Assembly: GCF_000150275.1 (NCBI RefSeq)
Contig: NW_002060977.1
Coordinates: 5,235 to 69,234, forward strand
Direction: 5' to 3'
Length of the DNA stretch: 64,000 bases
Origin: Trichoplax adhaerens
Taxonomy: Eukaryota > Animalia > Placozoa
In this document: in pieces, positions 8,951 to 47,053 of the stretch
How positions within the stretch are numbered: position 1 is the stretch's first letter
How the letters are laid out: each line of letters starts with the position of its first letter
Position numbers and translations under genes: made by a program
The notes under the pieces: generated by a model
The model's input: the letters and a program-made list of their open reading frames with translations, nothing else
What the model was told of the DNA's origin: nothing
Database searches by the model: none

Positions 8951-9015
8951 GTAATGAAATGAAAAGTATAGAGATCAAGCTACAAAACTTTAACAAACTT
9001 TGATTCTACTTTAGT

Positions 9016-11551: not shown

Positions 11552-12565
11552 TTCACTTTATAGTATCATCAGAAACGACGTAAATTGATGAATTCCTCCT
11601 GAACAAGAACAGCTTTTATTATTTGGAGAAAGTAAGACAAATATGATGGAGGAATTACTTTACAATTCGGAGTAGTCCATTTGAAAGAAGAAAGACTTTA
11701 TGTATTAGTATCATCATTATAAATTAAATATCTAATTTCTATCTAAAGCCACGTAATATTGTTTGATCATGCTAATGCACTTTTATTAATAAGTATCGTA
11801 TAATGACTTCGCTAATTATTACTCTCTTACAATTTTAGTAGATAGAGCAGCACTAACATAGTTTTTAAAATGAGGACCGAAATAATATATTTTTTTTCTA
11901 AACCGCCTGCAGAATTTTGGTATTTTTTTGAAGCTACTGATATCAATATTTTGAGCCTCTCAAATAAATAATAGACACTATGTTGATCCTAGAATATGAA
12001 GTGAAGTACTGACAGAGGTGTTTAATATGAAATAATTCTTGGATCGAAGCAAGTCTTCAACAATGACATTAAATTGTTACATTAGCAGTACTGGAAGTTA
12101 TTACAATATTGTTCAATCAGCTTATTTTATATGCATAAATTTCATAATTTTGCCCTACCTGTAGTTTAAATATCTTTTAATAGCCATTAAAGTAATGATA
12201 TCTGTGCAAAGTAAGGTTAAAAGTGATTAGATGATATTTTTAATTCTTTAGTACTTTACTCTACCGATTAAAAGATAGAAAAAATTCTAGATTTTTCCTT
12301 TAATATTCTACTGTTATTACACGTGTTAGTTATCATATATCATAGCATAGAGTACGTCGTCATTACAGTATCAATGTTTTCGAAACACTTTATTTTCTCA
12401 TATGTCATTGGATACTTTTAGACTTAGAATACGTTAAGGTTAAAATTTTGCATAGCTAGAAAATGACTCTAATTTAAGATTTCACGATTTTATTTAAAGT
12501 GATCTAAATAATTAGCACTAATCGAAATTTTGTTGCAATCTATTCTATCTATATCTATGTCTGAA

Positions 12566-13004
12566 TGTCACGGTACGAACTACCGTGAAGAAATAGATAT
12601 CTAAATTTGGTTAATATAATATAGTAGTGATATTATATTACAACTAGTTACTTACAATAGGAATTACTCTAATTGTAAATGTATTTCAGTAAATTTAATG
12701 CTGTGCTGTAATGTGCACTGAAATGATTCTGTGAATGGACACATTGTAGTCCGACTGTGAAGAATTGGTTAGGTAGATGTTCTCACCTAAGTATGTTTAT
12801 AAGATAACTCGTGAATGTTAGCTGCTGTAGAAGGGTATATAAGCCCTCAGATAGTTGAATAAAGTAGTTCTCAATTGTCTAGTTGAGTTTAACGTAGAAT
12901 CAAAGGCGTCTAAATTCTTGTGAGTAGGGATACTGAATCCCGGAGACTATAGTAATTTAGAGATTTGTTTTACGTTATCCTTGTCACGAAGCCGGTTTGT
13001 GATA
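12566..13004 (+). mobile_element. Solo LTR, 439 bp (family also at 20540 and 44103)
   Basis: TGTCACGG...TGTGATA termini, perfect TSD CTGAA, TATATAAA followed by AATAAA. Confidence 0.85.
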
Positions 13005-15850: not shown

Positions 15851-18800
15851 ATGGTGTTTAAGCAATGCATGATCATACAGCTATTCAGAAAACTTCTCCT
15901 AATTTTCATGCTTCTACATTGCTTAGGTTAGTCTTGAATTTATTGGCATGTAAAATATTATACAGCGTGCATGGAACTATTGTGAGGTCTTTCGTTAGTC
16001 ATATTTAATGAAAGATTAGTTTTTAATTCTGCAAACGCTATCTATAACAAGCGTACTATAAATGTAGATTACCGCAATCTCAGCACAATCACGTTATTTG
16101 TAGCCTAAAAGAATATAAATCTAACGAATCAATTAGTTTCAATCTAAACAAGTAACATATTATACTTATACGTTTTTAGAGCTATCAGGAGGTTTTAGTT
16201 TGTCATGTTAGATCAAAGATTTAATATTTCCATTCTGCAAACGCTATCAATAACAAGCATACTATACATATCGATTTTATCAATATCAGCAGAATTATAT
16301 TCTTTATGACCTAAAAGAGTATTAATCTAAGTAATCAGCAAGTTTAAGAACTTTTTCTTACTGTAATCTAAGCGAGTAACAAATTAAATATTCGTATTTC
16401 AAAATAATCTCGAATCAATTTTCTTCTCAAATAAACTCGACATTACATATTACGCTATTTCAGTATCAATGATATAAATTAATGAGAAGTATCTTGATTT
16501 AAATTAGTTTTAGATAGTTGTTTATAATAGCAAAAATACAATATTTCCGTAACCATGAAACAAGGCTTGAACTTCTCACAATACCGGTAATTTAGCTCAC
16601 GAATTGAATTGGACTCACTAAATCTTAGACACCTTCGCAGCTTTTTTTCGCCCTAATTTTATTTATTCATGAAGTATGAAGATAAATTTTTTCTACTCAG
16701 TTATTATGCATCAGATAAAATCGAAACCTGCGTCAGAGAGTGATATTATAGTTTAGTATATCTTAATATTATTTAAGCAAATGGGTTAGATAGCCTACTA
16801 GTTGAGCCACATTGACGCACATTTAAATTTATATGACCTGCACTTTGATTTCAAAATCGAGTAGATGCTGGTGTCTGTAGCAACCGATGTTACCATCATT
16901 AAATGGATCTTATATCTATGATTGCTCGTCAAACGGTCTTCTTAAATTTTTGCAGCAAAGAAAAATGAAGGAGATGATTTGTAATTATAGTTAAGTAATT
17001 AATTAGCGAAACAATTGGGCTAAGTAAAATCACTACTAACAAAAATCGAAATCCTTTGTCATGATTGATGATATTCGACTAAAAGATGATTCGCATACAA
17101 AAAATTCAATTTCGAAATTGGGAAAATCATATTAGAAGAACAATCTCTACTTTTAATGAGTGCATTTTAGTTAAATTATGTAATATCAAATTTATCTTTT
17201 CGTTAATGCATTTCAGCTATAAACACGATAATACACCAAGAAAAAGAGGCAGATAAAAAAATTGCACTTTTCCAAGAAACTCATTTTTGCTTGCTAAATT
17301 ATACTCTTGGCAACTATTTTACCCAGCGAACGTAATTTAATTTTCACTAGAATCTATTCATTTGAGTCTATTTAGAATTTAAAATGCTTTAACTACAGTG
17401 AGTTAGAACGGTTTTAAGCCATTAAACACCGCTAATTAGTCAACATACAAGAATATAGAATCCCAGTAAGCTGAAAACTCTTACCTGCAGTTTGGTAAAA
17501 TATCCTGCTTTGCCTGTGTTCTCAGCTGTAGGGTCTCTTAAATTACACTTAAATCGCTATTAGCAATCAAATTCTAATAGTAATGACTCAATAAATCTCA
17601 TAATGCGAATTCATGTGCTCCAGGAGCGATTAAAAATACAGGAATGTCTACATAGCAAAGTGTTGCGTGCTTTCATAACCACACTTAACTAAAACGCTAG
17701 ATAATATACTCTAAAGCGTAGATATTTAACAAAATCTAAGGCTAGAAATGCAATTTTCAAAAATTAGTAACTCATTCGAAGGCTGATACTTTCAAAACTG
17801 AATTATCTAATATGCAATAATTTAACAAATCAGCGGGAAAACTTACAAAAGCTGGACAGATCCTATGTTACTGGAGCCTAGCGTATTAAATTACGTCTAT
17901 TTGTTGTTATTCATAGATGCCATTGCCTTGATATGAAGATATCCAACTAAAATTTTTATAGCATAAGAAATGTCTTGAAAACTGATAAATTCGTCCTGTA
18001 GTGTACAAATTTATTGCAGTAAAATAGCTTAAGACCAATTTTTTGAGATTTCACACGAACAGTTCAATTATTCAGCTACATTATAAGATTATATTTGTAG
18101 TTATTTCTAGGCGATATTCACAGTATGTTATGTACTCTTTTCTGTGGAGGTACTTATAAGTTGGTATCCAATTGCATAGAAATCGTAGGTTTTATTGTAG
18201 ATGGTTTTAAACAGTTTTAAGTTAAGGATACGTGGTCCTGGATAATTTAGTTGATAAGCCAGTTTATGTAATAAGGGGAAATTTTACTAGAAACTAAAGT
18301 GCTATAGTTATGTTTTGGGACACCTTATCGCATATAGTTTAAATAAGTTACTACACAGTATTATTCGCATATACTACTACATAAAATCTATAAATTAATT
18401 TTTCACGTAAGCATAAGTTTTAATATCATTCAATACGACGTGAATTTGTATATGCAATCGGTTCAAAATCGTTAATTTACGTACAGACAATTTGGGACTT
18501 GTTAAGGTACATTTAGGAGCGACAAGTAAAAAATAGAATTTATCTGACCTTCTTTAATTTAGATAAATTGCAGTCAGATTAAGACGCTCTTGTGATGCTG
18601 GACTTAAAATTTCTTACCTGCTGTAATGTAACTTAGTATTATGATTGTAGACTGTTAGCCATGTGTAGTATAATGTACGGTAGATATTTATCCTAAGAGA
18701 TATTTGGTAGCTGTACCTATAGACTGTAGTGGTAGAGACGCTATGCTAGAGTACAGATGACTATATACAGTAAGCTGTTGAGTTACTAATAAGGCTATAG

Positions 18801-21800
18801 GTAAAATAAAACTATAAATCATATATTAAGATATGGTTAATTCATTGTACTTTGGCTGGTGTGAATAATGTCTACGTAAGTACTGTAGTCGTATCCATAT
18901 TGGATCAATGATGGTCCGCAGTAGAATAGTCTTACTAAGAATAATTTAACTATGTGTAAAACAAGGTAAAAGGTTGCCATGCGGATTGTAGCTGCGAATG
19001 CTACGGAAAGTATAAAAGCATGCAACTTTAGATTATTCTGTTAGTTCATTCTAGGAGTCTTTAGTAGTAGTATTCGGCTAAAGTAGAGCCGTGTGTAGTT
19101 AATCTTTGTATAAAATTCAATAAAGCCCTTATTTTTCTAAAATTTGGAATTTCTTGATTGGTATATATCACACCTGCAAAAATATGAATTTAGATAGGAT
19201 GTAACAATCATAATATTTATTGTGTAATAAAAATAAGCTGAAAATTTCTTGTCGTATGCTCAAAATTAGGAGGACAGAACTGGAGACAAACTATATTAGG
19301 TGTCAAAACTTCATTTCATTCACATTTTAAGCAACCACAAACTTGGGAAAATCCAAGCTGGTGTCCAACTAGTTGTAGTTGTAGTTCAAAAATGGATCTC
19401 TACTATTACGAACAAGAGTTAAACCTTACTTGCGTTGGTAAAAATTGGTCTGAAGTCATGTCTTCTAGACTTGAATATTCGAAAATTACAAATTTGTTAG
19501 TTATAAATCTTTGTCATTTTTTGATAATGAAGGATGATCTCTTCATGATAAACTAATGGTCTTTAATGATATTATCTACCTTATTATTTTTATTTATTGA
19601 ATTTAGGGTCTTGAGTCAGGCAAACTTCTACAATGTGACTGAAGATAAATTTCTCAAATTTACAAATCTTGTCTCTCTGTAAGTAATCTTTATAAAACCC
19701 TCCCTACGTAAATTTCGTAAAGGTCGGCATTGTTCCAATAGGAATATAAAATACTCTTATATGGATAGGATCATATTCCAGTTATATGCATCTTCATATA
19801 CTCATCATCAGCCATGTTTTATCTTGCTAAACTGTTTCTAAACGATTTCGACGGTGCATACAGTGACATTGGAAAAACTAATACGGAACATATTGCATCA
19901 ACGGCGTTTTCCAATATGAAAAAATTGAGGCACTTGTGAGCTTAAAATATCGATTTCTTCTATTTTCTACACAATATTTTGATACTTATTTCAGATATAT
20001 TGTATGATAATGAGGATATGAATAGTTTAATTTTCTCTCGTAATCAAGCTTTAAATGTAATCATATCTACAGGTATGTGAAATATAATCATTTACTGAGC
20101 TGGGGCGAGGCTTTCGATAATATAGAAAACTTACAATATCTGTAGGTAGAACAATTGTTATTGATATAATACCATGAGAAGTCTTTGAGTCCGATAATTA
20201 GCTCCCATGATTTCATCGATACCGCAATCATTAAACAACTTATAATCTTTAGGGATATATCTTACAATCCTGGAATTCAATTGAAAGAAATATTTACAAA
20301 GCCACATCATTTGAATACTCTGTAAGCCTTCTTGAAATACTAAGTCGTGATTACTGATCTATGTGAGACTAATAATGTCGAAACGCAATCAATTTCTACA
20401 GCGTGAGTAAAGATATAAGTTTGCGTGAAATTTCTTCCAAGACTTTCTTGAACATTCGAAATCTGCAATTTCTGTAAGTTATAAATCTCGACTTTTTGTC
20501 TACGTAATTACTATAATTATTTTGCAACTGCTATATTATTGTCACAAATCAGCTTCGCGACAACGATAACGTAAAACAAATCTTTAAATTACTATAGTCT
20601 TTGGGATTCAGTATCCCTTAAGTACCTCACAAGAATTTAGACGCTTTTTCTTCTAAGTAGCTATGGAACTCTTCTTCTATTTAACCATCTACCGAGCTTA
20701 AATATCCTTCGGCAGCTGCTATCATGTATGAGTCATTACAGTTCATGAAATTTAGTTCATATAGGATAGCTAAATTAATACAGAAATTATTCATAATCTT
20801 AGACATGTGCTGAAGGATTCTAGATAATTAGATTACTTTATGTCCATACACAGAATTATTTATAGTATCGTCTTTAATTTGAATATCTTCTGGATATTCA
20901 TCACTAGCGTTACAAGACATAACACTATAATCAGTTAACATTAGTTACCATATGAGAACTCTTACTAAAGAACAGCATAATTTACTGTAACAAAATAGTA
21001 GTTACCGTAGTTCTTACAGTAACTTATTATTAGTTATCTCCATATATATGTTAACCACTAAATTTAGTTATTTACTCTTGACGGTAGTTATTACTATTGA
21101 TACTATATATTTTTACTTTAAAAAGGCTATCTTTGGCTAATTTAAACATTAAAAAATTAGACGTTACGATAATTTCGCAATTTTTATTGAATATTTAGGG
21201 ATATCTCTGGTAATCTTATTGAAAAAATCAATTACACTACATTTGAGGGTCTTAAAAATTTGACTTATTTGTAAGACATCTATTCGGTTTAATTTTTATC
21301 CATTTAAAAGCACATAAAATATAAAATCAAATTTCAATAAATAAAGTTAGAATTAGTTAATTTTATAACTTTTATTGAACTATCTAATTGGCACGAATTC
21401 AATTAAATATTTCAATAGCAATTCAGGAAATAATGGTATTAAATCAATTCGATAGCCAATTTTATTAACTATGATATTTCATATCATAAGGTCTTTGTCT
21501 TACAACGAAATACAGGTGATCAGCAATAAATCATTCCACCGAATGAAAAGTTTACAAACTCTGTAAGTTACTCATCAAACATAAAATATACACACTTAAA
21601 TTAGTCAAGGAATTTAAATTATTCCATTATCAGTGACATAATAGAAGAAGAAAGCAATATTATATTTTTACATTCTGAACCTGAATATCGTCAATGCTTT
21701 AATATTTTTTCTCAGTAACTTAAAAATGAATGAACTAACTGAATTAAGCAACTACGCCTTCGATGGATTGAAAAATTTGGAGTCATTGTAAGAGCCTCTC

Positions 21801-24800
21801 TAATTAGTAACGAATGCATCGATCAAAGTAGAATTTTCTATTTAAAACTTTAGCAATAGAAGTGCTTACTTGTAATATGATGAGCGGCCTTAAGGCAATA
21901 ATATTGAGTATACTTACTTACGGTATTACTATAGATACGTGGCTAAAAATCGGATTAAAACCATACAACCAGATGCATTCTCTTCATTATATAACGTATC
22001 ATTTATGTAAGTGCTGTGCATATGATTGAAATATAGCTAATATAAGTTACTTAATAATGTCATCGCTGTCCAATATTAAATTTAATGTACAGAAATTCTA
22101 ATAATATTAAGCTTAGAATGAGGATTATAGCTTATAAGAATATCTTACAGCTACTCAATTAATTTTACTAATGTTATTGCTTGGTTAGTGATTTATCTTT
22201 AAACAGGCTCAAAAATCTCTCTGATCGTACATTCTTAATTAACAAACAGCTCAAGAGACTGTAAGTAACCCCGAAAATTGTCATTTCGATGAAAAATGTT
22301 GAATACAGATGTAAGACTGTGTAATATTGTATTCTAAGTTGATGATATATTTAGTAATGTCTACCGTAGGTGTTGTGTTCAACATGTGATAGATATACTC
22401 GTTAGAAGCTTAAGTATTAAATATAGCTAGCTTAGTAGCTGTAATCCTTTTGAAGAGGAGCGCTACAGTGCTCACACTAGAGCTTCACATGAAAGGTGTA
22501 AACTAGCCTGTATTTGAGATGCTAATACTGAAGTGTGTAGTAAGTAAGGTGCTAAGACTGTAAACGCGGAAAGGTATATAAGCGAATAGTTTAGTATAGT
22601 AAGTTAATTCTTTCTCGTTAGAGGTCCTCAGCTATTTGATTACGTTGTATCTTCGTAAAGGAGGTTTTGTTCAATAAATCTTAATTTACTAAAGTTTTTG
22701 AAGATTCTTGATCTATCAACCTCACAACAGATTTATATTCTTTAAATATCTTTCTCGTTCATATAAATCTTGTATATTTACTTCCGCACATAAATACATC
22801 CGATAAATTTCAACTTCATATTATCATGTTTTAGTTTATTGGCAGTAAACTGGATCCCCAAAATCAGCTCTTCGTTATTCAAAAATTTACATCAACTGGA
22901 ATATTTGTAAGCTAAATTCATTTCATTGCGTCGCAATCCATGTTATCATTACTGCTCATTTTATGCTAGATTATGATCATTTATTAATCAATGGAAAATA
23001 ATATATAGCAATGTCATCAAAATTTGATAACAAATTACTAGATAAATAGCTAAGTTTGAAATTAATATATAATCGACGATATAGCTAGCAATCATGCACT
23101 TTAGACTAGCAGACGCGATGTATTAGCCTAGTCTAGCTTCATAATGTCAGTTTCTGCTCATAGTAGGCTTGTTGTAACTCGGAATTTCTATCCGAGTCGC
23201 AACAAAATAGTTTCTTTGTCACTTCTTTCTATATAATCAACGTAGTATTCCCGCAGCACTTCTAGCGTTTAAGATTATGGAAATCTGTCTAAAATATGCC
23301 GGCTTGCATCAATACAAATGAATATACAGAGTTGAGCTATAAGTGTTTAGAGATAATAATCCTTAAACTATTACGAAATCACCAAACCAAGTATGATATA
23401 AAACAAAGGAAATACTGATAGGTGAAGACTGCATTTTTATCCAAAAAATAATTTAAAATACTCTATAGCGGAATATAAGTTAATTTGTATAATATCGCTT
23501 CTGTCAACCAGCCAAGATTACTTTCCTTTATTTTATACTTGTTATCGAATCTTAGATCATCGTATTTTTCGAATAAAATTGATAAAGTATTTAGAATCAT
23601 ATAAAATCATCTTAATATTTGATTAAGTAGTTTTTCATTATCATAATATTACAAGACAACTTTGCAATAAGACAAGTCAATTTATAAATAATTTTAAGAA
23701 TTTTCTTTATAATCCGGTACACTGCATTTATATGCTTTTCTATAATAATTTACTAGTCCCACTTAGACTATTACATTTGAAGCGTTCCAACAAATTAGAG
23801 GCTAATTTTACCTGTTACTTACTAATGAGGATAATAGTATTGACAAAGATATCTAATGACCAATACAAAATAGCCATATTATAATATGTCCTATTACGTG
23901 ATATTCCTGTAATAATCTACCATAAGTAAGTTACCAACGTGAAATGCAATGTCATGATACTGTGACCCATACCAATATTTTGAATTTGCAATTTTATGAC
24001 TATGAACATTTTGAAATATCTACTTTTTTCCTGCATTTGCAATTTTTGTTAACCTAATCCTAAGCCTAATAATATCGCATCTGTTTTGTTAGGGATATGT
24101 CGTCAAACAAACTTAAAATCATTGAAAAAGACGCTTTTAAAGGATTATGGTCAATACAGACAATGTAAGTGTAAAGATTTCCAACTAAGGATAATGGTGG
24201 ATAATTTTATGAAAAAGATTTCTAGAAATCTAATTTATAACAGAATTATACGAGAAAATTATTTAGTTAACATCCTGGATGGTATCTTTTCACACATGAC
24301 TACACTATCAGTGCTGTACGTTTGCCTGGATAAGTTTAAAAGAATTACTTTTGCAATCTAATTTCGCAACTCAAATATTGTTTGATTTATTCATCAAATA
24401 ATTAACAAGATATTAATTTCAATTATAATGCTTTCATCGTCAGAGATTTATCCCGTAATATGATTCGTGATATTGAAGCAAGAGCTTTCAAAAATTTAAC
24501 ACAACTATCAACGCTGTAAGTCAAGAACGCATATCTAATACAGCTATTCTGTATTAAAGATAAAGTTATAGATTTATAGACTAAAATCAATGAACCAATT
24601 ACTAGGTCGTTGCTGTTAATAAGATTAAATCTTATTTTTTAGACCTAAAAATTTCGCTATCGCATATGATTATTTAAGTAGTGCTAATAAGTAACTGTAT
24701 GAAATGGGATAAGCTTATTAGCAAGTTCATTATTTTGACCATTAATATTATTGAAATAGCAATCGAATTCATATTGTTACATCTAAAAATTGATCAAGAG

Positions 24801-30800: not shown

Positions 30801-33800
30801 AATAAGGATAGTCTAACAGAATTATCCTAACATAGTTATTTCTGCTGTAATACAGTAAATAACACTGTAACACTTACAAAACAAATCTTTTTTGATTTAG
30901 CGTACAGTGTACACTCTTTTATAAAGCTAATATACGGTATATGTACTTACAATAAGTTGCTGAAACTGTAAATAATATGCTACATGATCAGTATAAAAGA
31001 ACTACTGTAACACAATCTTAATATTGGAAACGTAGTTCCGTAACAATATCACAGTATTTTTATCGATAAATATTGGACAAGTTTTCACTCAGCCTTACTA
31101 TGTGAATTTTAAGTACAGATCTACGATACCTTCGAAAAAAGGGCCTTAAATTAGCAATACTAAGATGAGTACAGAATGATCACTCTAAAGTTATATATAA
31201 TACGCTAAGGGTAATAAAATTAAAGTTATGGCATTAAAATCAGCTCAATATTTGATATATATTGTAGCCCACTTAAGCAGCTATTACTGATATTAACTGC
31301 CTTAATACGATACAGTGAATAAATTAAAACTAAATATATGCTATCATCTATTGAAATACTCATAAAAGTAAGGTAATGGTATTGATGATCTAAATGATTT
31401 ACTTCGCTAAGATTAGCATTATTTATTTGACATAAATTAGACAGCAAACTTATTATCTTTTTAATTGATTTATTCTAGATTTTTAGACCACAATTGGATG
31501 CAGCGTATTGCTAAAGGAGCTTTTAAACATCTTGGTTTGACTAATTTGTTAGTATCTAAATACAAATTAAATTGCATACAATAGAAATGCAATCTACTGG
31601 TTAAATACCAGAACCTATTCGCAATAAGACATTTATTAGCAAAATATAACGTCTACGTGAGGTTTCTTTGGCTTTTAAATATTTTTCAGGCATCTAAGTC
31701 ACAACAATCTAATTCACATTGATTTCTTAAGATCAACAAAACATCTGAAGAAACTGTAAGTAGTAGTCATAAATTTAAAAGCTATGTAGTCTAGATCTTC
31801 CATGACACTCTGAGTTTACCCGTAGCATTAATCATTCTAATCAAAATATGCTTACTAACCACGTATATGTTACGGAGCCATGCTCCGAAATATTAATTGC
31901 TATGTTAATTAAAATATCTCATTTAAATTATTGTTTGCTCCAGTAGCTTATTAGATATTAATATTTATTAATAAGCACTTGTTATTGCCACGGTATCAGA
32001 AAGTTAAATATTGTTGACGTGTCGGAGCTAACACGCTTAGTTAGTAAGCGTTAATTAATAACACCTTAAGTATAAGATCAATTACTTTGCAGAGCCTTGA
32101 GGCTCTAGTTGCTATATTAGGATATGCACACTGTAAGTTATCACAAAACAGCTTTGCAACAAGATAACGTATTGTACGATCATAAGTCAATTCCTTGAAC
32201 CACGTATCAAGGAACGATATCTGCACTATCACAAACACTTTTGTTCTACTAGCAGACTACACAAAGACTTAAACGCCTCGTATTTTACGTTAAACACTAA
32301 GTTTGAGAATCCACTTTATTACACGATATACTGCATTTGTATACTATTCCTCAATAGTTCATGAGTCATAGTTAATACAATTAACATTAGAATCATTTAC
32401 TGAACTAGATATTAATTTTAGCTACTGCTCCCTTAATGCGGACAACAGTATTTACGAACATAGACATGTAATGACTAATACAGAATAGTCAGATTACGAT
32501 ATGTCCTATCACGGAACATTTCCATGATAATTTACAGTCTACCATAAGTAAATCACAAACACAATGATTCGAACTGTAAGCAGATGATTTGCATTCCCTA
32601 TTATAACTATTAATTTCAGTATGTGTATAATTGTCACAGTCATAAAAAGTCAGTGCTATATTAAAACACTGTATATCCAAATTAGAAGTTAACTAAATAA
32701 GGTTAGTCTAACAGAATTATCCTAACATAGATATTTCTACTCTAATACATTATATAGCACTGTCACAACAGTGTAAGTTGCTATATTAAGAATATTCGCT
32801 AGTGTACTATCGGCGTTGGCCGAGACTATAAAAAAAGCCGAGCATTAGCTTAGCTTCTCAGTTCCAGTTAGTCATTTGCAGGATCTTTTGACTATTATTG
32901 CTAAGAATATTCTTACGTTTTTCTTTAGTAAATTTTACGACTAAGGTAAATAAAGTGAAGTATTTAAACCTGTTACTCATTAGTAGCTTATTTGTGTAGC
33001 TGAGAGTTAGTTCAACTACGATAGGTCCCTAAGTTAGTTGGGAGCACGAGTACTAGTGAATTTAGTGTTTAAGATCCAGTTTCTTGTTACAAAGGAGATT
33101 TGTAACAGTATAGCAATCTTTTAAAATCTCCTTTATTAAATTAGGACTAATGTATTTTATAAAAAATTTTTTTAACAATAATTAAGCTATTGATTTCTCC
33201 GCAATAATTTGATAACTTGCATTTAATTTCTTACGCTCGTATCTACTAGCTATTTAAATCATAATCGTATCGAAAAGCTTTCTAGAAAAAATATTATGAA
33301 GCTAAAGCATTTGGAAATCTTGTGAGTTTTATGTTAAGATCCAACAAGATATTATAAAATGCCAATAACGTCTCTAAGAGTCAATGCTTCTTATACTAGT
33401 TCAACTAATCTTATGCAATATTGGCTTATCCATCTTTTTATATTTGAATAAAATAGAGATTTATGTCGAAATAAAATTAATGAAGTTGAGGCAAATTTGT
33501 TTAGTAATCTTCATAAGCTAACACACCTGTAAGTATTTCTCAAATGGAATATTGATTTCAAATAAGTTACATTTTATCACACAACCCTATAAACACTACA
33601 GTATAGCTACATATTTTATGATGATACAATAGTTAATTTATGGAATAAATTTAAGAGTTGCGTTTTAATAAATGTCTTATTCATTTCCAGCAATTTATCT
33701 AGTAACCATCTGATGCAACTTCCAACAGGTATTTTCAGTGGCCTTGAAAAGTTGAATACTCTGTGAGTTATGCTTACTACTTTGAAATAGTTTCAATAAA

Positions 33801-36800
33801 CTAGTTGCTAATGATCTGACTTGGCTAGATCATAATGCCTTTATGTTTCAAAGCTGTAGCTTTATTTATTTGAATATCATTTGCTACAATTTCAATAATC
33901 AAGAATTAAAATCATAGCAATATTTTGGTTTTCATTTCTATTTAGAAAATTAGTAGGTTGTCAAATTGAAAATCTGACAAACCTATTCCCCACTTCTATA
34001 TCTGGATTAAAATATTTGTAAGACACTATGAATATGAAAAAGTGTATGGTGCAATATCTAGCCTTACTCTAATGGATAAATTTTATTTATGGTGGTATCG
34101 CAGATATTTGCAAGATAATATTATCGAACATATCAATATCGATACCTTTATCCACTTGAAAAAGCTAAGTGAATTGTGAGTATGATAAAGTGATGGTGTA
34201 GACAATCAATTGGAACATTATAAATTGACTAGCTTACAGCATGTCGAAGCTAAGAATATTTATTTATTTTTGAAAGAATTGTGAATATGATAGACAATGA
34301 TGTAGACGATAGATCAGATCATGAATTGCTTTAATTTATAGCATTTCGAAGCTTAGAATATTTATTTTTTTAAAGAATTTTGAGTATGATAAGTAACGGT
34401 ATACATAATAAATCTGAACATCATAATTTGCTCTGGCTTATAATATATCAAAGCTAAGAATACTTAATCTAATATACTTAGATATTTGGATAATAACCGA
34501 TTGATATCCAGTAGTGCTAAAATATTCACTCCACTTCGATGGCTAAAAGTATTGTATGTTTCAATTAGAGATATTGCTACTATTGGTAGTGATAATGATA
34601 TTTAACCTTTGTACCGTCATGTAATTTAGGTCCCTTAACAATAACGTCAAATTTGGTAATATCTCACTGAATTCTTTGAGGGATCTGAAAGCATTGATGC
34701 ATTTGTAAATATTAATTTCTTCTAAAATAGATATTTATGACTACGAATTTACTATAAATTTACTATATCTCAAGTAATATAAGCAGCATATCAAATTCAG
34801 AAATTTCACAAATTAGATATAGTTAACTTAATTGTACTCATAGGGTGAAAATATAAGATATTTTTAGAAGTTACAGGCAAGAGATGGTTTTGAATCTATG
34901 AAGTTCACTATAATATGGTAATAAATCTCCTGATAAATATCTACATAGGAAAATTTCAAATGTTGGAAAATTCACAACCGAAAGAGGAACTCATGGTATC
35001 TTTTCAAAGATAGAATCATTGTAAGTAGATTATGATTTCTTAATATGAAATCAAATATGAATTTATTTTTATTTATTTTGCCATTATTGTTGCCTGAAAA
35101 TTTAAGTTCACTGTTAAAAATCTTATCAAATCTTCCATCATTTCCACTAATTCAGGAAAGGCATTTAAATCGTTCAATGACTACAGCTCTTTTTAAATAT
35201 TTCGGCGACATTTCAAAAGCTCTTTTATAAATAAATATCGAAATAGCCCAAATATATTCAAATCAATGATTATTTCTGTAGAAGTAATTCCTAATATGTA
35301 ATCATTTAATATCTTTATTTAAAGATATGGGAATAGAAATACTGTCACGTTTCAATTACTGTAATTAATTTGCTACCTTTTATATTAAAAATGTGATTAT
35401 TTCTTAAGAGTTATGGATAAATTAGCGGATATATACTAAAGCATACTTTGTTTTATTTGCAACTTTTACCAACAATGTTAGGGACATAAGTTATAACAAT
35501 TTGACAAGTAATTCTGGTTCTATGAATTTATTTATTTCGAAAGAACTCAGATCAATGTAAGTATCATAACAACATCTAATAAATTTAATAAAATTTTATA
35601 TATTCTTTAAGTCAGATTATGTCGTTAAAATCTTGCGTATGTGAACCTTATTTACTATAATATAGTTTCTCTACACCTTGTTAAGAGGTCAGTTTGACGT
35701 AAATCAACAATTACTAGGAAATTTTGACGACAAATATTCTTTAATCACGATTGCTATTCTTGTTTATTTAAAAACTGATCAAAGATCATTAAGAAAATTT
35801 AATTATAATCTATGATGTAATCTATTTCTATTTCATCTACAATGGACAGCAATATATCCGGAAATCAGTTGACAAAATTTCCAGATGGAATTGAAATAAT
35901 GCTGCATAAGAAATTACACCACCTGTGAGTAGAGTTTTATCTTTATGATACTATTTAATATGTAGTTGCTATGCACATCTTATCTGCTATGTTAACTATA
36001 GCATTCCTTCCTTAGTAACACCACTTAGTGTCTTATTATTGCGAACTAGGAATACTACTAACCTGCATTGAGAGGTTAAGATTGCTCTTCAAATCCAAGT
36101 TACTGTAAATCGGAATAACAATCAGTTCATAGTCTTATATAGATATGATTAAGCATCGTGACGCCTTCAATCTTGCTAGAAAACCATAATCTACTTTATT
36201 GTCGGCGAAGCTACAGCTTGTTTAAATTTAGATACTTAAAAGTGACCTAACTGTACGAGTCACTTCGCCTTTTAGCAATTAACCAAATTAATGTGTTTGA
36301 GAGTTTTCATTTGTACAGTAAGGATTCAATTCAATCTAATCTTATTATATTTACTGTACTAGTATTAAACCAATCAATTCCTAATCAAAGTTTGAAATAC
36401 ATTAGATTACATTATTAAGATTAGGGTTTGAAGCCCGTAAGAATTTTGTTACCCCTCTTCAATATTGAAATTATCCAGGTGTTCGTGTATTGCACTTGGG
36501 TATGAAAGCCTAAGTTGTAATACCTAATTGAGATACTGCATTTTATCTAAGCTTAGAAGCTACACTTTCAATCTTGACATTGTTTGTGGTAATACATGCA
36601 ATCTAGTAAACTACTAGGTGGTTGCTATTTTAATCCATTTAATTCCAAATTAAGAATTGCTTAAATATCATTCATAAAGCACTACAGTTACACTTCAGTA
36701 GACCGTAAACATTACTGGCATAATAGCATATATCAAACGTAACTACGAAGCCGCGTAAATTTTAAGATTCGTTCAGTATTAATTAATTAAGTAATACTCT

Positions 36801-39800
36801 AGTAATAAGTACAGAAAATATAATTTCATGATGCTTATGATTCTATTCATTAATCGATATAGATTAATTTTTAATTTCTTGAAATAATAAAACAGTCGTG
36901 AGCTACCTTACCAAAGGCCTGGCTTGAACCTTCGCCGACATAATTTCCTTCTTTCTTCCAGTAATTTTTCTGATACAGGTATAAGTGTCAAAGAGATTGA
37001 GAACAACCTTAACGTGCAAATTTCAGATTGCCAAAACATGGATGAATCAGAAAGAATTCAAAATTCTTGTGATTTTACTTTGTAAGAAATGTAACTATAA
37101 TCTTAAAATTAAGCCTTTACATATATGAATCAATATGTTAGCGTTGGATTGACATCACCAATTGAAAGTAATAATAAATTCAGTGTGCAAATAAAATTAT
37201 TAAAGTAAAATACTTAAAATCATACGATAATATACTGTTCAGAAACTTAGCCATTGTAAATATATCCTCTTTTGCAGCGAATCTAATTACTTTAATGTGC
37301 TCATATTAGCGATTTCAGCAAGCTGAAATGGATAAAAATACCAAAAGTAATAAATCATTTCCGATTGCATCTGACCCATTTGTGAGTAATTATAACTATT
37401 CTTAATAATTGTGTTGAATAGCCTTCTTTCAGTAATGAAAGCTAGTAATTATTGAAAAGTTATAACTTTCTATCGTTATTACAGGTATTTAAGCCATAAT
37501 AACTTACAGCGTGTTGATATAAGCAATATCTTTCCTAGCAGCGACACGAGACTACGTCAACTGTACGTACATAGGCGTGTAATATCTTTAATTATTAATC
37601 CCTTCCGATACTTTAACATTTTCTGCAGGCAAATTTTGCTAATAATTTATATCTTAAAGCATGAATTTCCAAATTTAGTAGTATAAATTACAGAAAATTT
37701 TGCGAAACTACCTCCGTAAATATTATTTTGCTTGTTAACAGCCTATTCTTAAATTCATAAATGACATTTTAGTTATTGTAGCAAATGCGCCTAAATATAT
37801 TTCACCATTCCAAATTCACAACTTGAAATTTTACCGTTGAATTACTAAATGCTATTTCTAGTCAAAATCTCTTATTTAAGATACCGTATTTATTTATAGT
37901 ATCGATAGATAAAACTGGTTAACATTATAAGATGTAGATTTTTAAACTAAAAAAGAAGTAGTATCAATTATAAAGAAATTGTACGTTTTACTTTTGCTTG
38001 TAATTGTTGGTTGATATTGTCGTATAAATATGAATGTAAAAGGACATGTATTGCGATTGCACTATTAGCAGTTCAAATTCTTTCTCACTTTTTCTGGGTT
38101 TTAAGAGCATAAAATCATCACTGCTAAGCATATTAATAGTATTTTTATCAACTTTTAAAGATTTACATAAACTTTATAAAGATATACGAATCAATTATAG
38201 TGGAAAAATTTTGATCTTAATTAGTCAAAATATTTACTCTGCCTGCTTTACAGAGACCTAAGTTATAACAAACTAAATTCCTTGACTAACATTCAACGAA
38301 TAACTTTTTCAAATTTAAATGTGCTGTAAGTTATTTATTATTAGGATCTTCTGTTATTGCATAAAAGGAAAGGCGAAAGTAAATACAGCTAACGCTAAGT
38401 TGCTATATTATTGTAATATTTGGACTACCTTATGTTAGAGATGTATCCAACAACAATTTAAGCGACATATGTAGCATTTCATGGGTTGGCTTTGCTGAAA
38501 GCTTAAGGCAATTGTGAGTACTTCTAGGTATTTCGTTAAAGCAACTATGATAAGAATAATATAAATAGCACAGAAATAATACTGTAATCAAATATCAACA
38601 CCAATCTAATGCCTAGCTGGACATCAACACAAATGGCGGTGTACTAGAATCAAATATCTAGATGATTACTCCAATAATAGGCCAATGAGATACCTGCATT
38701 AGGATTTAAAGCAAACAGTTTCAATTTAAACAATCTTCCTCTCTTGTATCCTAGACCTACTCTTAAACTTAGATATTCTTACATATTTATGCCAAAGTAA
38801 TTAATGTGATTGTAGTAGTTAGTCAATGATCAATAAAAATTTTAGTCGTTGATTGCGAGCGATAATCATAATATGAAATGTAGCTCACAAATACAAATAT
38901 GAGGCGAAAAATAGTGAATCCTATATAATACTAACGTTTCTTTAAGATCAGGATTTCATTATTGCAGAAAATTTATCATTAATCAAACCTAAAGATTTAC
39001 TTATTGCCTTACCTATAGAATACTATTAAATATTTTCGTTCAATTTTATACTATGATAAAGATATTTGGACCGAAACAATATTAACACACTAAAAGAGAC
39101 TTGTTTTCAAGGATTAAATAAACTGTATTCGATGTAAGTTATGTTTGTAATATCGCTTATTACGTAGAGCAGATAGTGGAGATTAGCCTTTGCGTGTTCA
39201 ATGCTTTAAATTGTGTTATAAATTTTAGAAGCCTTAAAGAAAATTCCATACCATATGTAGCAAAAGAAACATTTTATCGCGTACCAGGACTTATAAAATT
39301 GTAAGTAGCAATGTGCCGTAAACGGCTTCATGACGATATCTGTAATAAAGTAATACACCCTACCTTCATAGCTTAAGTTTTGAAAAAAATCGACTTTCAA
39401 ATATTGCTATAGATGGTACTTTACTATTTCATTAAGATATGATACATGCTTTCAACAAATGGTATGCACTTCAATATTTCTGAAAATATAACAAACTAGT
39501 TCTATCGCAAAATAACGAGCAAGCCATGTCTACAAATCTTCTCACTAAACCTTCTATCAGGGCACTGTTCTGTTTAAAGAAATATTTGAAAAAAATTATG
39601 CACATTGCTTAGTTTTTTGGTGCGCTATGTCAACAAGAATACGATTAGGTAATAAAAGTACTCTATCCATATCTTTTTTTCAGGCAAAGTTCCTTCACTA
39701 AAGTTGCCTATAGCTAAAATGTCGATACAGTGGATTCTGCCTTATATAATTTTACCGTTATGGAAACTCGTGCGAATTTTGATCACACTCATGTTCGCAC

Positions 39801-41656
39801 ATATTATCTAGAATATTTCTACTAATCCCAGACTGATTATTAGTTGTTGTAAAAAAACCTGTTCTACTGATTGTAATTAAAGTATAGTTCACACGAATAA
39901 TTTTTTGAACAGCAGATTTTATTACTGGGAAAACTTCCTACAACAGCAGATCTTAGTAAAAAAGGACTAAGAGCAACAATGACAGAAAAGTGTAGCAGCT
40001 TAAATATGTTATCTAACTTGTTTATAACATGATAATTGCGAAAAACATAATTCAACGCTTACAGAACTTAGTATGAGAATAAAATTATATGATTGGTATC
40101 ATATTCTATAAAGCTGAAATTAACATACTTGAATTATCACAAACATTGCTTATATATAATTATTATAGTTAATGACCCAAGGTTTCGGTATTATTCTTAA
40201 TTTAGGTCTAATTCACTTCTGCATAACATGTTGATAACAATAGCTTGTCTAACAGCTTCACTATAGTTGTGTATAATACATATGTCTTGCGTAGAAATGA
40301 AATTTCTGTATGTCAAGAAATATTAGCAATTCAGTGCAAGCAATGGAATTGTCGTACAAATTTAACAGAGAGAAAATTATATTAATCATAGACTATTGTA
40401 ACTTCTGACAAATCAAGATCTTAGCTGATTAATCCATAATGAATCTTTAATGCTGCCTATATCATCGAATTAAATAGACAGAATTATTTTGTATACTATC
40501 TAGATATTCTTCACGGACCTACTTGTGCTGTATGGTACCAGCATCGGTTAAGACTTGCTATCCCTTACGACGATACGATGGTCTATCGACTTGTGATGGT
40601 CTACTATCCCATTTTGTTCTGCAAGCCTATATTTGGCTGATTGGCTGTACCGCCTTTATTGGTAATATTGCTGTCTTTAGTATGCATGTGAAGGAAACAA
40701 AATGCAAAAAAAACGGAGTTCCATCATTTTTAATCGCTAATTTAGCAGTTGCTGACTTTAGCGTGGCTAACTATATGTTAATTATTGCAATTAGCGATCG
40801 ATTTTACAGTAATAATAAATTTGGAGTCAATTCCGAACAATGGCTACGCAGCATGCCATGTTTATTCGCCTGTTTTATATGTTGTGCAGCAAGCCTAATG
40901 TCTGTCTTTATGATGCTGATTATTAGTATTGATCGATTTATTTGCATGGTTTATCCGTTTTCTAAAAGAAAATTAACACTTAAATCTGCATTATTGTTGG
41001 TTATGGGCTTTTGGCTCTTTTCAATTACATTCGTTGGCGTTCCGGTTGTTTATAGCATTGGTGCTGATGGAGATAATCGATTGCATGGTTACAGTAGTAT
41101 ATGTATGTCTAGTAATGTTCTTAATCCATATTTTAAAATGTGGATTACAGCTTATGTATCTATTACTATTATCTGTTGGATTATTACATGTTTCCTGTAC
41201 ACTAAAATGCTAAATTCGATTCGTCAATCAAGTCAACAAGTACGCAAAAGTGAGAATAGTAAAGATAAGCGTATAACTATACGTCTGTTCCTGATATTAA
41301 TCACGGATTTGATCAGTTGGATTCCGTATTATATCATTTTCATGCAGGTTTTACATACATCAGAATCTGTAAACATATTAACACTGCAATTCGTCATCAT
41401 ATTTGCCTTACCAATCAATTCTGCAGTAAACCCCTGCTTATATACGTTATCCAGCCAAACAGTCATTAATTATGCTAACAGTATTAGCAGCTCTATGCGC
41501 AGTGCATATCAAATTGTTCGCAGTAGCTCTATATTGAGTAAAAGTGGGAAAACCAAAAGCCCATCTACGACTAGCATCAGAATGGATCTAAATACATCGG
41601 AAAATCGATCACCATGGAGACATAGTACGGGAAGCAATCTATCGAGTGAAGTGTAG
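15851..41656 (+). CDS. Giant leucine-rich-repeat-containing G protein-coupled receptor (LGR-like, about 44 LRRs, about 1539 aa), 47 exons
   Basis: Hand-spliced with GT-AG sites, open throughout. Signal peptide 15851-15926 (MVFKQCMIIQLFRKLLLIFMLLHCLG). LRRNT 19270-19495 (WCPTSCSC..LTCVGKNW). LRR exons: 19607-19678, 19864-19935, 20073-20141, 20253-20321, 20402-20473, 21199-21270, 21491-21562, 21716-21787, 21935-22006, 22189-22260, 22835-22906, 24093-24164, 24244-24315, 24444-24515, 24841-24912, 25029-25100, 25215-25286, 25376-25447, 25644-25715, 26195-26266, 26642-26713, 26791-26856, 27860-27928, 28231-28296, 28469-28540, 28681-28761, 31479-31547, 31690-31755, 33250-33321, 33457-33528, 33691-33762, 33946-34017, 34104-34175, 34482-34553, 34630-34704, 34949-35020, 35482-35556, 35850-35924, 37310-37381, 37485-37562, 38254-38325, 38439-38513, 39062-39133, 39229-39300. 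Hinge+7TM exon 40504-41656. Confidence 0.88.
16027..16400. repeat. Diverged tandem duplication (about 205 bp period) in intron 1
   Basis: TTCTGCAAACGCTATC..ATAACAAGC..CCTAAAAGA..AATCTAA occurs at about 16027 and about 16233. Confidence 0.7.
18622..19172 (+). mobile_element. Solo LTR, 551 bp (inverted sister copy at 53337-53904)
   Basis: TGTAATG...ATCACA termini, perfect TSD CCTGC, TATAAAA and AATAAA. This element explains the duplicated 62-aa ORF in the track. Confidence 0.88.
20540..21024 (-). mobile_element. Solo LTR of the 12566 family, intronic
   Basis: Reverse complement matches the 3' part of the 12566 element (GGGATACTGAATCCC..ACTATAGTAATTTA..TTTACGTTATC). Flanked by (T)ATTAT on both sides. 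Confidence 0.8.
22310..22726 (+). mobile_element. Solo LTR, 417 bp, intronic
   Basis: TGTAAG...CTCACA termini, perfect TSD ACAGA, TATATAA then AATAAA. Confidence 0.8.
27161..27675 (-). mobile_element. Solo LTR (630-bp family, internally deleted, older copy)
   Basis: Homologous to 30242, 32139 and 59855; TSD gttat/gtaat (4/5). Confidence 0.8.
28944..29366 (-). mobile_element. Solo LTR, 423 bp
   Basis: TGCCACA...GTCACA ends, TSD acgat/actat (4/5), TATA run inside. Confidence 0.6.
29377..31045 (-). mobile_element. LTR-like element hosting a nested solo LTR
   Basis: CGTCACA...CCGTAACA ends with 4-bp ATAT on both sides; contains 30242-30872. Confidence 0.55.
30242..30872 (-). mobile_element. 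Solo LTR, 631 bp (nested)
   Basis: TGTCACA...TGTAACA termini, perfect TSD CTTAC; near-identical to the 32139 and 59855 copies. Confidence 0.88.
31868..33107 (+). mobile_element. Solo LTR (about 610 bp) interrupted by a nested LTR
   Basis: TGTTACGG...TGTAACA termini, perfect TSD GTATA, TATAAAA and AATAAA in the 3' half. Confidence 0.8.
32139..32767 (-). mobile_element. Solo LTR, 630-bp family (nested in 31868-33107)
   Basis: Near-identical to 30242-30872; TSD imperfect (taagt/acagt). Confidence 0.85.
34171..34481 (+). repeat. Intron built from three tandem ~100-bp units
   Basis: GAATT(G/T)TGA(G/A)TATGATA...AAGCT(A/T)AGAATA repeated at about 34171, 34276 and 34375. Confidence 0.75.
40504..41656 (+). 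CDS. Terminal exon of the giant LGR: short Cys hinge plus rhodopsin-class 7TM domain
   Basis: The 377-aa ORF has seven hydrophobic segments, GN (TM1), NLAVADF (TM2), SIDRF, TDLISWIP (TM6) and NPCLY (TM7). The track's start is an internal TTG just after the AG acceptor. Confidence 0.93.
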
Positions 41657-45733: not shown

Positions 45734-45783
45734 NNNNNNNNNNNNNNNNNNNNNNNNNNNNNNNNNNNNNNNNNNNNNNNNNN
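45734..45783. other. Assembly gap (50 N)
   Basis: Run of n. Confidence 0.99.
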
Positions 45784-47003: not shown

Positions 47004-47053
47004 NNNNNNNNNNNNNNNNNNNNNNNNNNNNNNNNNNNNNNNNNNNNNNNNNN
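47004..47053. other. Assembly gap (50 N)
   Basis: Run of n. Confidence 0.99.

What the first reader, a model, noticed from the sequence alone, without database searches (positions are those of the whole stretch)
15851..41656. Giant LGR-type GPCR with about 44 LRRs, invisible to the ORF track
Seen: 44 consecutive in-frame LRR exons between an LRRNT exon and a hinge+7TM exon, with no stops, about 1539 aa. Known: glycoprotein-hormone receptors and RXFP1/2 have roughly 10 LRRs and LGR4/5/6 about 17. The short CC..C..(S/T)C..LL hinge resembles type-C (RXFP/GRL101-like) LGRs, yet no LDLa module is present at the N-terminus. Inference: the ectodomain would be a very long solenoid suited to a large or polymeric ligand (microbial surface, matrix or cell contact) rather than a small hormone; this may be an undescribed LGR subclass.
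Basis: partly seen in the sequence, partly recalled or inferred. Interest (0 to 1): 0.85.

Follow-up and report, generated by a model that had tools for sequence, protein, structure and literature searches.

The report
Giant 45-repeat LRR receptor gene, Trichoplax
This is a real, transcribed gene of the placozoan Trichoplax adhaerens for a hormone-receptor-type GPCR whose outer part carries about 45 leucine-rich repeats, one per tiny exon; the public gene model shows only part of its last exon, but this family of oversized placozoan receptors was already described in 2022.

Summary
On the + strand, 15851-41656, I rebuilt a 48-exon gene. The CDS is 4710 nt and encodes 1569 aa with no internal stop. 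All 47 introns are GT..AG. The 46 introns from the LRRNT exon on are phase 2, and each split codon encodes L, I or F.

Spliced RNA contigs from four studies confirm the last eight joints, including the last LRR exon to the 7TM exon. A loose end confirms a ninth. One contig of 3834 nt reaches 3051 spliced nt further upstream, which fits the whole chain.

The genome is Trichoplax adhaerens. The public model of this gene is 289 aa, part of the 7TM exon only.

The "undescribed subclass" claim fails. A 2022 review (PMC9545775) reports 46 T. adhaerens LGRs. Forty-one are placozoan-specific, with their own hinge and unusually many LRRs (example: 34). Trichoplax sp. H2 records hold "GRL101-like" relatives up to 1270 aa. 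This scan had already reached the same verdict on three paralogs elsewhere in this genome.

This is a new, corrected member of a known kind. The ligand is unknown.

The parts
15851..15926 (+). Exon 1: ATG plus signal-peptide-like MVFKQCMIIQLFRKLLLIFMLLHCL, donor GTTAGT, phase 1
   Evidence: It is the only signal-peptide-like first exon in 13000-19300. It is in phase with the acceptor at 19300. An in-frame stop lies 15 codons upstream. Inferred; not covered by reads.
19300..19495 (+). Exon 2: LRRNT cap (..WCPTSCSC..x..C..)
   Evidence: The acceptor at 19300 is inferred (19358 is the alternative). The donor is phase 2. Pfam LRRNT gave no hit. A similar LRRNT exon exists in the next gene at about 60855-60995.
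19607..19678 (+). LRR exon 1 (72 nt)
   Evidence: AG/GT, phase 2-2, split codon L
19864..19935 (+). LRR exon 2 (72 nt)
20073..20141 (+). LRR exon 3 (69 nt)
20253..20321 (+). LRR exon 4 (69 nt)
20402..20473 (+). LRR exon 5 (72 nt)
21199..21270 (+). LRR exon 6 (72 nt)
   Evidence: Pfam LRR_8 E 0.0015 for the single exon
21491..21562 (+). LRR exon 7 (72 nt)
21716..21787 (+). LRR exon 8 (72 nt)
21935..22006 (+). LRR exon 9 (72 nt)
22189..22260 (+). LRR exon 10 (72 nt)
22835..22906 (+). LRR exon 11 (72 nt)
24093..24164 (+). LRR exon 12 (72 nt)
24244..24315 (+). LRR exon 13 (72 nt)
24444..24515 (+). LRR exon 14 (72 nt)
   Evidence: Pfam LRR_8 E 0.0014
24841..24912 (+). LRR exon 15 (72 nt)
25029..25100 (+). 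LRR exon 16 (72 nt)
25215..25286 (+). LRR exon 17 (72 nt)
25376..25447 (+). LRR exon 18 (72 nt)
25644..25715 (+). LRR exon 19 (72 nt), irregular repeat (NGGGCSLSRPL..)
   Evidence: good donor, phase and split codon fit. No Pfam hit. This is one of the less certain exons.
26195..26266 (+). LRR exon 20 (72 nt)
26642..26713 (+). LRR exon 21 (72 nt)
26791..26856 (+). LRR exon 22 (66 nt)
27860..27928 (+). LRR exon 23 (69 nt)
28231..28296 (+). LRR exon 24 (66 nt)
28469..28540 (+). LRR exon 25 (72 nt)
28681..28761 (+). LRR exon 26 (81 nt)
31479..31547 (+). LRR exon 27 (69 nt)
   Evidence: The 2717-nt intron before it holds a dispersed repeat.
31690..31755 (+). LRR exon 28 (66 nt)
33250..33321 (+). 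LRR exon 29 (72 nt)
   Evidence: The 1494-nt intron before it holds the same repeat.
33457..33528 (+). LRR exon 30 (72 nt)
   Evidence: Pfam LRR_8 E 0.0026
33691..33762 (+). LRR exon 31 (72 nt)
33946..34017 (+). LRR exon 32 (72 nt), irregular
34104..34175 (+). LRR exon 33 (72 nt)
34482..34553 (+). LRR exon 34 (72 nt)
34630..34704 (+). LRR exon 35 (75 nt)
34949..35020 (+). LRR exon 36 (72 nt), irregular
   Evidence: No Pfam hit. Less certain.
35482..35556 (+). LRR exon 37 (75 nt)
   Evidence: Its last 26-30 nt are the loose end that the RNA contigs of all four runs carry before 35850 (table 7).
35850..35924 (+). LRR exon 38 (75 nt)
   Evidence: RNA joint 35924>36962 in X1, X3 and X8.
36962..37081 (+). 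LRR exon 39 (120 nt): a repeat with a 16-residue insertion that holds two Cys
   Evidence: RNA joints on both sides.
37310..37381 (+). LRR exon 40 (72 nt), irregular
   Evidence: RNA joints 37081>37310 and 37381>37485 in all four runs.
37485..37562 (+). LRR exon 41 (78 nt)
   Evidence: RNA joints.
38254..38325 (+). LRR exon 42 (72 nt)
   Evidence: RNA joints 37562>38254 and 38325>38439.
38439..38513 (+). LRR exon 43 (75 nt)
   Evidence: RNA joints.
39062..39133 (+). LRR exon 44 (72 nt)
   Evidence: RNA joints 38513>39062 and 39133>39229 in all four runs.
39229..39300 (+). LRR exon 45 (72 nt), last repeat
   Evidence: RNA joint 39300>40504 in all four runs.
40504..41656 (+). Last exon: Cys-rich hinge (YLCCMVPASVKTCYP..DGLSTCDGLL), 7TM domain (DRF, SWIP, NPCLY), C-tail, stop at 41654-41656
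   Evidence: Pfam 7tm_1 E 4.5e-28. PDB best match RXFP1 at E 5.6e-27, with the hinge aligned. Seven hydrophobic segments and the motifs. Covered by RNA contigs in four runs.

Best explanation
A functional, transcribed gene of Trichoplax adhaerens for a leucine-rich-repeat-containing rhodopsin-type GPCR (LGR). It belongs to the placozoan-specific LGR expansion. The protein (about 1569 aa) has a signal peptide, an LRRNT cap, about 45 LRRs of the 24-residue type forming one very long glycosylated solenoid, a short four-Cys hinge of type-C appearance, and a 7TM domain with DRF, SWIP and NPCLY motifs. One repeat (exon 39) carries a Cys-Cys loop insertion. Proposed mechanism (inferred): an extracellular ligand binds the LRR solenoid. 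The change is passed through the disulfide-tied hinge segment just before TM1, which aligns with the tethered-agonist 'p10' region of TSHR. The 7TM bundle then activates a G protein. It cannot use the LDLa tethered-agonist route of RXFP1, because it has no LDLa. The one-repeat-per-exon, all-phase-2 layout explains how repeat number grew by exon duplication, and why ORF-based tracks and the 2008 gene models miss the ectodomain.
For: Gene structure:
- 48 exons. All introns are GT..AG, and all 46 split codons from the LRRNT exon on encode L, I or F.
- The reading frame stays open for 1569 aa.

Transcription and splicing:
- Nine joints are confirmed, among them last LRR exon to 7TM exon, in contigs of four studies. 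One of these runs (X8) is on record as RNA-Seq.
- A 3834-nt spliced contig reaches 3051 nt upstream of exon 38. The model needs 2921 nt to reach the ATG.
- No second locus at or near 100% identity exists in the genome, so the contigs do not come from a retrocopy.

Family:
- Pfam 7tm_1 at E 4.5e-28.
- Best solved relatives are RXFP1 (98 bits, hinge included), TSHR (95 bits), LHCGR and FSHR.
- The closest proteins are all Trichoplax (44-77% identity). They include LRR+7tm_1 models and H2 'GRL101-like' proteins of 953-1270 aa.
- About 55 full hinge+7TM paralog exons lie in the 105.6-Mb genome.
- PMC9545775 describes the family.

Constraint:
- 7 of 16 strain differences in exons are synonymous, against 22% expected by chance. 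Most replacements are conservative.
- Against the neighbouring paralog, dN/dS is 0.17 for the 7TM exon and 0.23 for four LRR exons.
- The ectodomain holds 21 N-glycosylation sequons.
Against: - Only 9 of 47 joints were seen in RNA. Exon 1, the LRRNT acceptor and 38 joints rest on sequence logic and on the length of one contig.
- Four to five repeat exons are irregular. Exons 19 and 36 are neither recognised by Pfam nor covered by reads, so the count could be 43-46.
- The ligand, the G-protein coupling and the hinge-relay mechanism are inference from type-A and type-C LGR structures. Nothing here tests them.
- Three of the four runs are only guessed to be RNA, although their GT..AG joints argue for it.
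Confidence: 0.88

Rival explanations
1. Same gene, different job: an environment-facing pattern-recognition or chemosensory receptor rather than a hormone receptor. It would sense microbes, algal food or conspecific surfaces. The giant LRR solenoid would do what TLR ectodomains do, wired directly to G-protein or arrestin signalling.
For: The family shows birth-and-death evolution. In this window alone there are four related copies, among them one 7TM exon with an in-frame stop, one truncated fragment and orphan LRR exons. About 55 paralogs lie in the genome. Between neighbouring paralogs the LRR exons are 44% identical and the 7TM exon 78%. True TLRs are absent in placozoans, and most of their C-type-lectin scavenger receptors are GPCRs (PMC6321704). 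That is a precedent for a recognition domain on a 7TM.
Against: There is no direct evidence. dN/dS of the LRR exons is 0.23, not above 1. The authors of PMC9545775 treat the family as orphan hormone-type receptors. No expression site is known from this work.
Confidence: 0.25
2. The exon array is a cassette system. Because every LRR exon is symmetric (phase 2-2, multiple of 3), exon skipping would make many receptor isoforms with different repeat sets. This is the reading of the parallel first-stage note s1-790481.
For: All 45 LRR exons have lengths that are multiples of 3 and the same phase. Any subset could be skipped without breaking the frame.
Against: In the 6 kb laid, four runs from four studies show only the constitutive path. 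No exon-skipping joint was listed (table 5). The 3834-nt contig length fits full inclusion. Contigs drop rare variants, so rare isoforms are not excluded.
Confidence: 0.07
3. The LRR exons belong to two or more genes, or the 5' part is a decaying pseudo-array that is not part of the mature mRNA.
For: Large introns of 2.7, 1.5, 1.2 and 1.0 kb interrupt the array. 38 joints were not seen in reads.
Against: No stop occurs in 1569 codons. No second LRRNT, LRRCT, 7TM exon or Cys-rich segment lies inside the array. The large introns are explained by copies of a dispersed repeat of about 600 nt. A spliced contig runs 3051 nt upstream of exon 38.
Confidence: 0.04

Closest known systems
Trichoplax-specific LGRs (Tadh-LGR6 to -46) of the 2022 review PMC9545775; example Tadh-LGR-15 with 34 LRRs
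   Same: Same species. LRR ectodomain plus own short Cys-rich hinge plus rhodopsin-type 7TM. Unusually many LRRs, no LDLa. The nearest sequence relatives are all Trichoplax LGR-like proteins.
   Different: This gene has about 45 LRRs, more than the 34 given as the example. Its public model is a 289-aa piece of the 7TM exon (P0001). I could not map it to a TriadITZ identifier of the review's Table S2, so I do not know whether it is one of the 46.
Type-C LGRs: RXFP1/RXFP2, Lymnaea GRL101
   Same: RXFP1 is the best solved-structure match (7tmw, E 5.6e-27). The hinge aligns: (Y/C)C..(A)P..V(R/K).C.P..DG(I/L)S(S/T)...LL. The nearest non-placozoan relatives are mosaic LDLa/CUB-bearing LGRs of echinoderms and Nematostella.
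   Different: No LDLa module, which defines type C and which RXFP1 needs for activation. About 45 LRRs instead of about 10.
Type-A LGRs: TSHR, LHCGR, FSHR
   Same: The 7TM domain is nearly as similar (95 bits). The segment before TM1 (LSTCDGLLSH) aligns with the FNPCEDIMGY tethered-agonist region of TSHR.
   Different: Type A has 9-11 LRRs and a long hinge with a sulfated-Tyr loop. Here the hinge is about 35 residues and there are about 45 LRRs.
Type-B LGRs: LGR4/5/6
   Same: LRR ectodomain larger than in types A and C (about 17 repeats), one LRR per exon.
   Different: No LGR4/5/6 chain was among the PDB matches at E of 1e-10 or better. About 45 repeats instead of 17.
Long-LRR receptors of other architectures: Toll-like receptors, plant LRR receptor kinases, Drosophila chaoptin (from my own knowledge, not tested)
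   Same: Very long extracellular LRR solenoids (about 20-41 repeats) that bind ligands on the concave or lateral face.
   Different: Those have a single TM with TIR or kinase, or a GPI anchor. Here the solenoid sits on a 7TM GPCR.

Membership tests
LGR (leucine-rich-repeat-containing GPCR, rhodopsin class) | Rhodopsin-type 7TM domain | tested here: met
   Pfam 7tm_1 at E 4.5e-28, covering positions 1-260 of the 260-position profile. DRF, SWIP and NPCLY motifs and seven hydrophobic segments.
LGR (leucine-rich-repeat-containing GPCR, rhodopsin class) | N-terminal LRR ectodomain on the same polypeptide as the 7TM | tested here: met
   The frame stays open across 45 LRR exons into the 7TM exon. 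RNA joint 39300>40504 and seven further LRR-LRR joints in four runs.
LGR (leucine-rich-repeat-containing GPCR, rhodopsin class) | Cys-rich N-cap (LRRNT) and Cys-rich hinge flanking the LRRs | tested here: inconclusive
   The CPxxCxC...C pattern is present in exon 2, but Pfam LRRNT gave no hit on the single exon. The four-Cys hinge aligns with the RXFP1 hinge.
LGR (leucine-rich-repeat-containing GPCR, rhodopsin class) | 7TM closest to known LGRs among solved GPCRs | tested here: met
   RXFP1, TSHR, LHCGR and FSHR score E 6e-27 to 3e-20. The next family (galanin receptor) scores 4e-14.
Type-C LGR (RXFP/GRL101) | LDLa module(s) N-terminal to the LRRs | tested here: not met
   No LDLa-like pattern, DxSDE motif or open segment with 5 or more Cys in six frames of 6200-19400. 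Exon 1 is a plain signal peptide.
Type-C LGR (RXFP/GRL101) | Type-C hinge consensus before TM1 | tested here: met
   HMMER alignment to RXFP1 residues 378-415.
Type-C LGR (RXFP/GRL101) | About 10 LRRs | tested here: not met
   45 LRR-type exons.
Type-A LGR (glycoprotein hormone receptors) | Long hinge (over 100 residues) with conserved Cys boxes and a sulfated-Tyr site | tested here: not met
   About 35 residues lie between the last LRR and TM1. The TSHR alignment starts only at the Cys just before TM1.
Placozoan-specific LGR expansion (PMC9545775) | Trichoplax gene, non-A/B/C, own hinge, unusually many LRRs | tested here: met
   Species: a TRIADDRAFT paralog lies on the same 417,558-bp contig, and the assembly has 105.6 Mb in 1414 contigs. 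45 LRRs. The nearest relatives are Trichoplax proteins at 44-77% identity, against 35% or less outside placozoans.
Placozoan-specific LGR expansion (PMC9545775) | Placement inside the 'red field' clade of the review's Figure 6 tree | not tested
   No tree was built: human and Nematostella reference LGRs were not on hand as named sequences. The review's TriadITZ identifiers cannot be resolved with these tools.

The most novel reading that the evidence does not exclude
The giant LGRs, this 45-repeat one among them, are the LRR-based recognition arm that placozoans otherwise lack (they have no true TLRs). On this reading they are a rapidly duplicating family of TLR-like solenoids wired straight to G-protein or arrestin signalling, sensing microbes, food algae or non-self surfaces.
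Probability: 0.15. Interest if true: 0.7.

Novelty: new member of a known kind. Interest (0 to 1): 0.3.

Why it matters
The gene model matters for annotation. The public T. adhaerens model of this locus is a 289-aa 7TM fragment, so about 80% of the protein, the whole ligand-binding part, is missing from databases. With about 45 repeats it exceeds the 34 quoted for this family and is among the largest LRR ectodomains known on any GPCR. Three earlier follow-ups of this scan found 44, 49 and 50 repeats in paralogs. That suggests published LRR counts for the placozoan LGRs are systematic underestimates. The biological question is why an animal with a handful of cell types keeps dozens of such receptors, and what they bind. 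It remains open and has already been posed in the literature.

Tried and rejected
1. An LRR-like open segment in the last intron (39371-39414, LSFEKNRLSNIAID) was rejected as an exon. Its only donor gives the wrong phase. Paralog proteins P0028 and P0029 go straight from the last LRR to the hinge. RNA joins 39300 directly to 40504.
2. The GTTAGT donor at 15927 with the acceptor at 19300 fits better. Neither is verified by reads.
3. A search for further exons in the large introns with splice-site matrices and an HMM built from the chain found none. Those introns hold copies of a dispersed repeat.
4. tblastn of long Trichoplax paralogs (P0026, P0028, P0033, P0037) against the window could not guide the LRR chain, because the repeats are too diverged.
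5. Pfam on single exons gave only sub-threshold LRR_8 hits (E about 0.002) for regular repeats and nothing for irregular ones or the LRRNT.
6. An Rfam hit in the last intron (snoRNA snR60/Z15, 22.8 bits against a gathering score of 41) was rejected as chance. The very deep RNA signal there comes from a dispersed repeat with 40 or more genomic copies.
7. The proteins of 1600-3300 aa among the 7TM relatives are not giant-LRR receptors. They are a double-7TM scallop model and mosaic LDLa/CUB/lectin/MAM LGRs with few LRRs.
8. It was assembled only inside local scripts to check frame, stops and repeat counts. So there is no InterPro-style LRR count, no AlphaFold model of the ectodomain and no search for a full-length ortholog.
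Full report
WHAT IS THERE

The window is AT-rich (about 30% G+C). In 15000-43000 only one ORF of 100 aa or more exists, 40523-41656 (+). It is a rhodopsin-type 7TM domain (Pfam 7tm_1, E 4.5e-28).

I scanned the + strand for AG|..|GT segments that stay open when 1 nt is left at the start and 2 nt at the end. This gave a long series of 72-nt exons encoding 24-residue LRRs. With splice-site matrices and an HMM trained on the clear exons, I extended the series to 45 LRR-type exons between 19607 and 39300. Thirty-two are 72 nt. The others are 66-81 nt, plus one of 120 nt.

An LRRNT exon (WCPTSCSC...C) precedes them. The hinge+7TM exon, which starts at 40504, follows. Every one of the 46 split codons encodes L, I or F, which is the first leucine of the next repeat. 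All introns are GT..AG, and 28 donors are GTAAG. 33 of the 45 units match LxLxxNxL strictly and 41 loosely.

The only signal-peptide-like first exon in 13000-19300 is 15851-15926 (MVFKQCMIIQLFRKLLLIFMLLHCL, donor GTTAGT, phase 1). It is in phase with an acceptor at 19300. Its CDS of 4710 nt encodes 1569 aa with one terminal stop.

IS IT ONE TRANSCRIBED GENE?

The 7TM exon is held by 19 public runs from 7 studies. I laid contigs of four runs from four studies on 35657-41656, the 6-kb limit. One run, X8, is on record as RNA-Seq.
- All eight predicted joints appear at the exact borders with GT..AG ends: 35924>36962, 37081>37310, 37381>37485, 37562>38254, 38325>38439, 38513>39062, 39133>39229 and 39300>40504.
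- Five of the eight are seen in all four runs. 35924>36962 is seen in three. For 38325>38439, X8 places the cut one base further on.
- The loose end before 35850 in all four runs equals the tail of exon 35482-35556, which gives a ninth joint.
- The odd 120-nt exon 39 and the irregular exon 40 are thereby confirmed.
- One X3 contig of 3834 nt runs 3051 spliced nt upstream of exon 38. My model needs 2921 nt to reach the ATG, which leaves about 130 nt for a 5' UTR. That fits the whole chain being one mRNA.
- No exon-skipping joint was listed.
- The genome has only one locus at 100% identity to the 7TM exon, so the contigs do not come from a retrocopy.

The large introns (2717, 1494, 1186 and 1003 nt) each hold a copy of a dispersed repeat of about 600 nt. 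They contain no further exon candidates and no Cys-rich caps. This argues against a hidden gene boundary.

WHOSE GENE IS IT?

- The protein search returned the window's own public model, P0001. It has 289 aa, is 100% identical, and covers only 77% of the 7TM exon.
- On the same 417,558-bp contig lies TRIADDRAFT_62166 of Trichoplax adhaerens (77% identical).
- The assembly has 105.6 Mb in 1414 contigs.
- All close relatives are Trichoplax proteins. Among them are H2 'G-protein coupled receptor GRL101-like' records of 953, 1062 and 1270 aa.
- About 55 full hinge+7TM exons (E below 1e-55) are spread over the genome, ten of them on this scaffold.

WHAT KIND OF LGR IS IT?

Among solved structures RXFP1 is best (E 5.6e-27). 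Its alignment starts in the hinge: [25 protein letters not shown] against CCMVPASVKTCYPLRRYDGLSTCDGLL. TSHR, LHCGR and FSHR follow closely, but they align only from the Cys before TM1. There LSTCDGLLSH lies opposite FNPCEDIMGY.

The nearest non-placozoan relatives are mosaic LDLa/CUB-bearing LGRs. No LDLa-like, DxSDE or Cys-rich segment lies in any frame of 6200-19400. So the receptor has a type-C-like hinge and 7TM but fails two type-C criteria, LDLa and repeat number. It is not type A either, because the hinge is short.

IS IT KNOWN?

Yes, as a family. The review PMC9545775 (Front Endocrinol 2022) re-annotated T. adhaerens and found 46 LGRs. Forty-one are Trichoplax-specific. [quoted passage not shown] The example, Tadh-LGR-15, has 34.

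Three earlier follow-ups of this scan on other pieces of this genome reached the same verdict for paralogs with 44, 49 and 50 repeats. I checked the species and the paper myself. What is new here is the corrected model of this locus, and a repeat number above the published example.

HOW IT LIKELY WORKS (INFERENCE)

The 1141-residue ectodomain has 21 N-glycosylation sequons. It should form one long LRR solenoid. With 45 repeats it cannot be a flat horseshoe and must be a superhelix. Irregular repeats lie at exons 19, 32, 36 and 39-40, and exon 39 adds a Cys-x13-Cys loop.

Ligand binding would be relayed through the disulfide-tied hinge segment to the 7TM bundle, as in glycoprotein-hormone receptors. 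The LDLa route of RXFP1 is not available.

The gene looks constrained:
- 7 of 16 strain differences in exons are synonymous, against 22% expected by chance.
- dN/dS against the neighbouring paralog is 0.17 for the 7TM exon and 0.23 for the LRR exons.
- The LRR exons have diverged about three times faster in protein sequence (44% against 78% identity).

From my own knowledge, long LRR ectodomains of plant receptor kinases bind small ligands.

A pattern-recognition or chemosensory role is a live alternative. The family shows tandem birth-and-death evolution, placozoans lack true TLRs, and they already use lectin-GPCR fusions (PMC6321704). There is no direct evidence for it.

STEP LEFT OUT

Exons were searched singly by reference. 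The joined translation was used only inside local scripts.

Noticed in passing
window 2500-6154 (+); 7TM exon 4928-6154: An upstream paralog with a few LRR exons. Its hinge+7TM exon is 55% identical to the studied one and carries an in-frame TGA at 5681-5683, in the third intracellular loop. A copy of equal similarity without the stop lies on the small contig G000:C987:239-1246. The stop may therefore be an allele, an assembly error or a young pseudogene.
   Followed up: partly
window 47380-50111 (+): A duplicate of the 3' end of the studied gene: four LRR exons (47380-47451, 47555-47629, 48032-48103, 48292-48363) plus an intact hinge+7TM exon (49068-50111, 78% identical). It is probably TRIADDRAFT_62166 (P0003). 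No long LRR chain was found upstream, and assembly gaps lie at 45734-45783 and 47004-47053.
   Followed up: partly
window 46623-47009 and 51934-52273 (+): Debris of further duplications. One piece is a hinge+TM1-3 fragment with two stops, next to the N gap. The other is two orphan LRR exons that copy the last two repeats of the studied gene with no 7TM exon behind them.
   Followed up: no
window about 60855-64000 (+), continuing beyond the window: The next giant LGR gene starts here. It has an LRRNT exon (KWCPMKCSC..) at about 60855-60995 and at least ten 72-nt LRR exons up to 63481. Its hinge+7TM exon (72% identical) lies at G000:C1380:86523-87617, about 17 kb past the window end.
   Followed up: partly
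window 23703-23921, 27157-27689, 30238-30886, 32134-32781: A dispersed repeat of about 600 nt (70-97% identity between copies) sits in four introns of the gene and accounts for the four longest internal introns.
   Followed up: partly
window 39850-40110 (last intron): A short dispersed repeat in two pieces (about 79 and 180 nt) with at least 40 copies in the genome at 78-96% identity. RNA contig depth there reaches 1812 in run X1, so some copies are highly transcribed. The weak Rfam snoRNA hit (snR60/Z15, below threshold) is probably chance.
   Followed up: partly
window 16021-16139 and 16227-16345 (intron 1): A direct repeat of 119 nt, 77% identical, spaced 206 nt apart.
   Followed up: no
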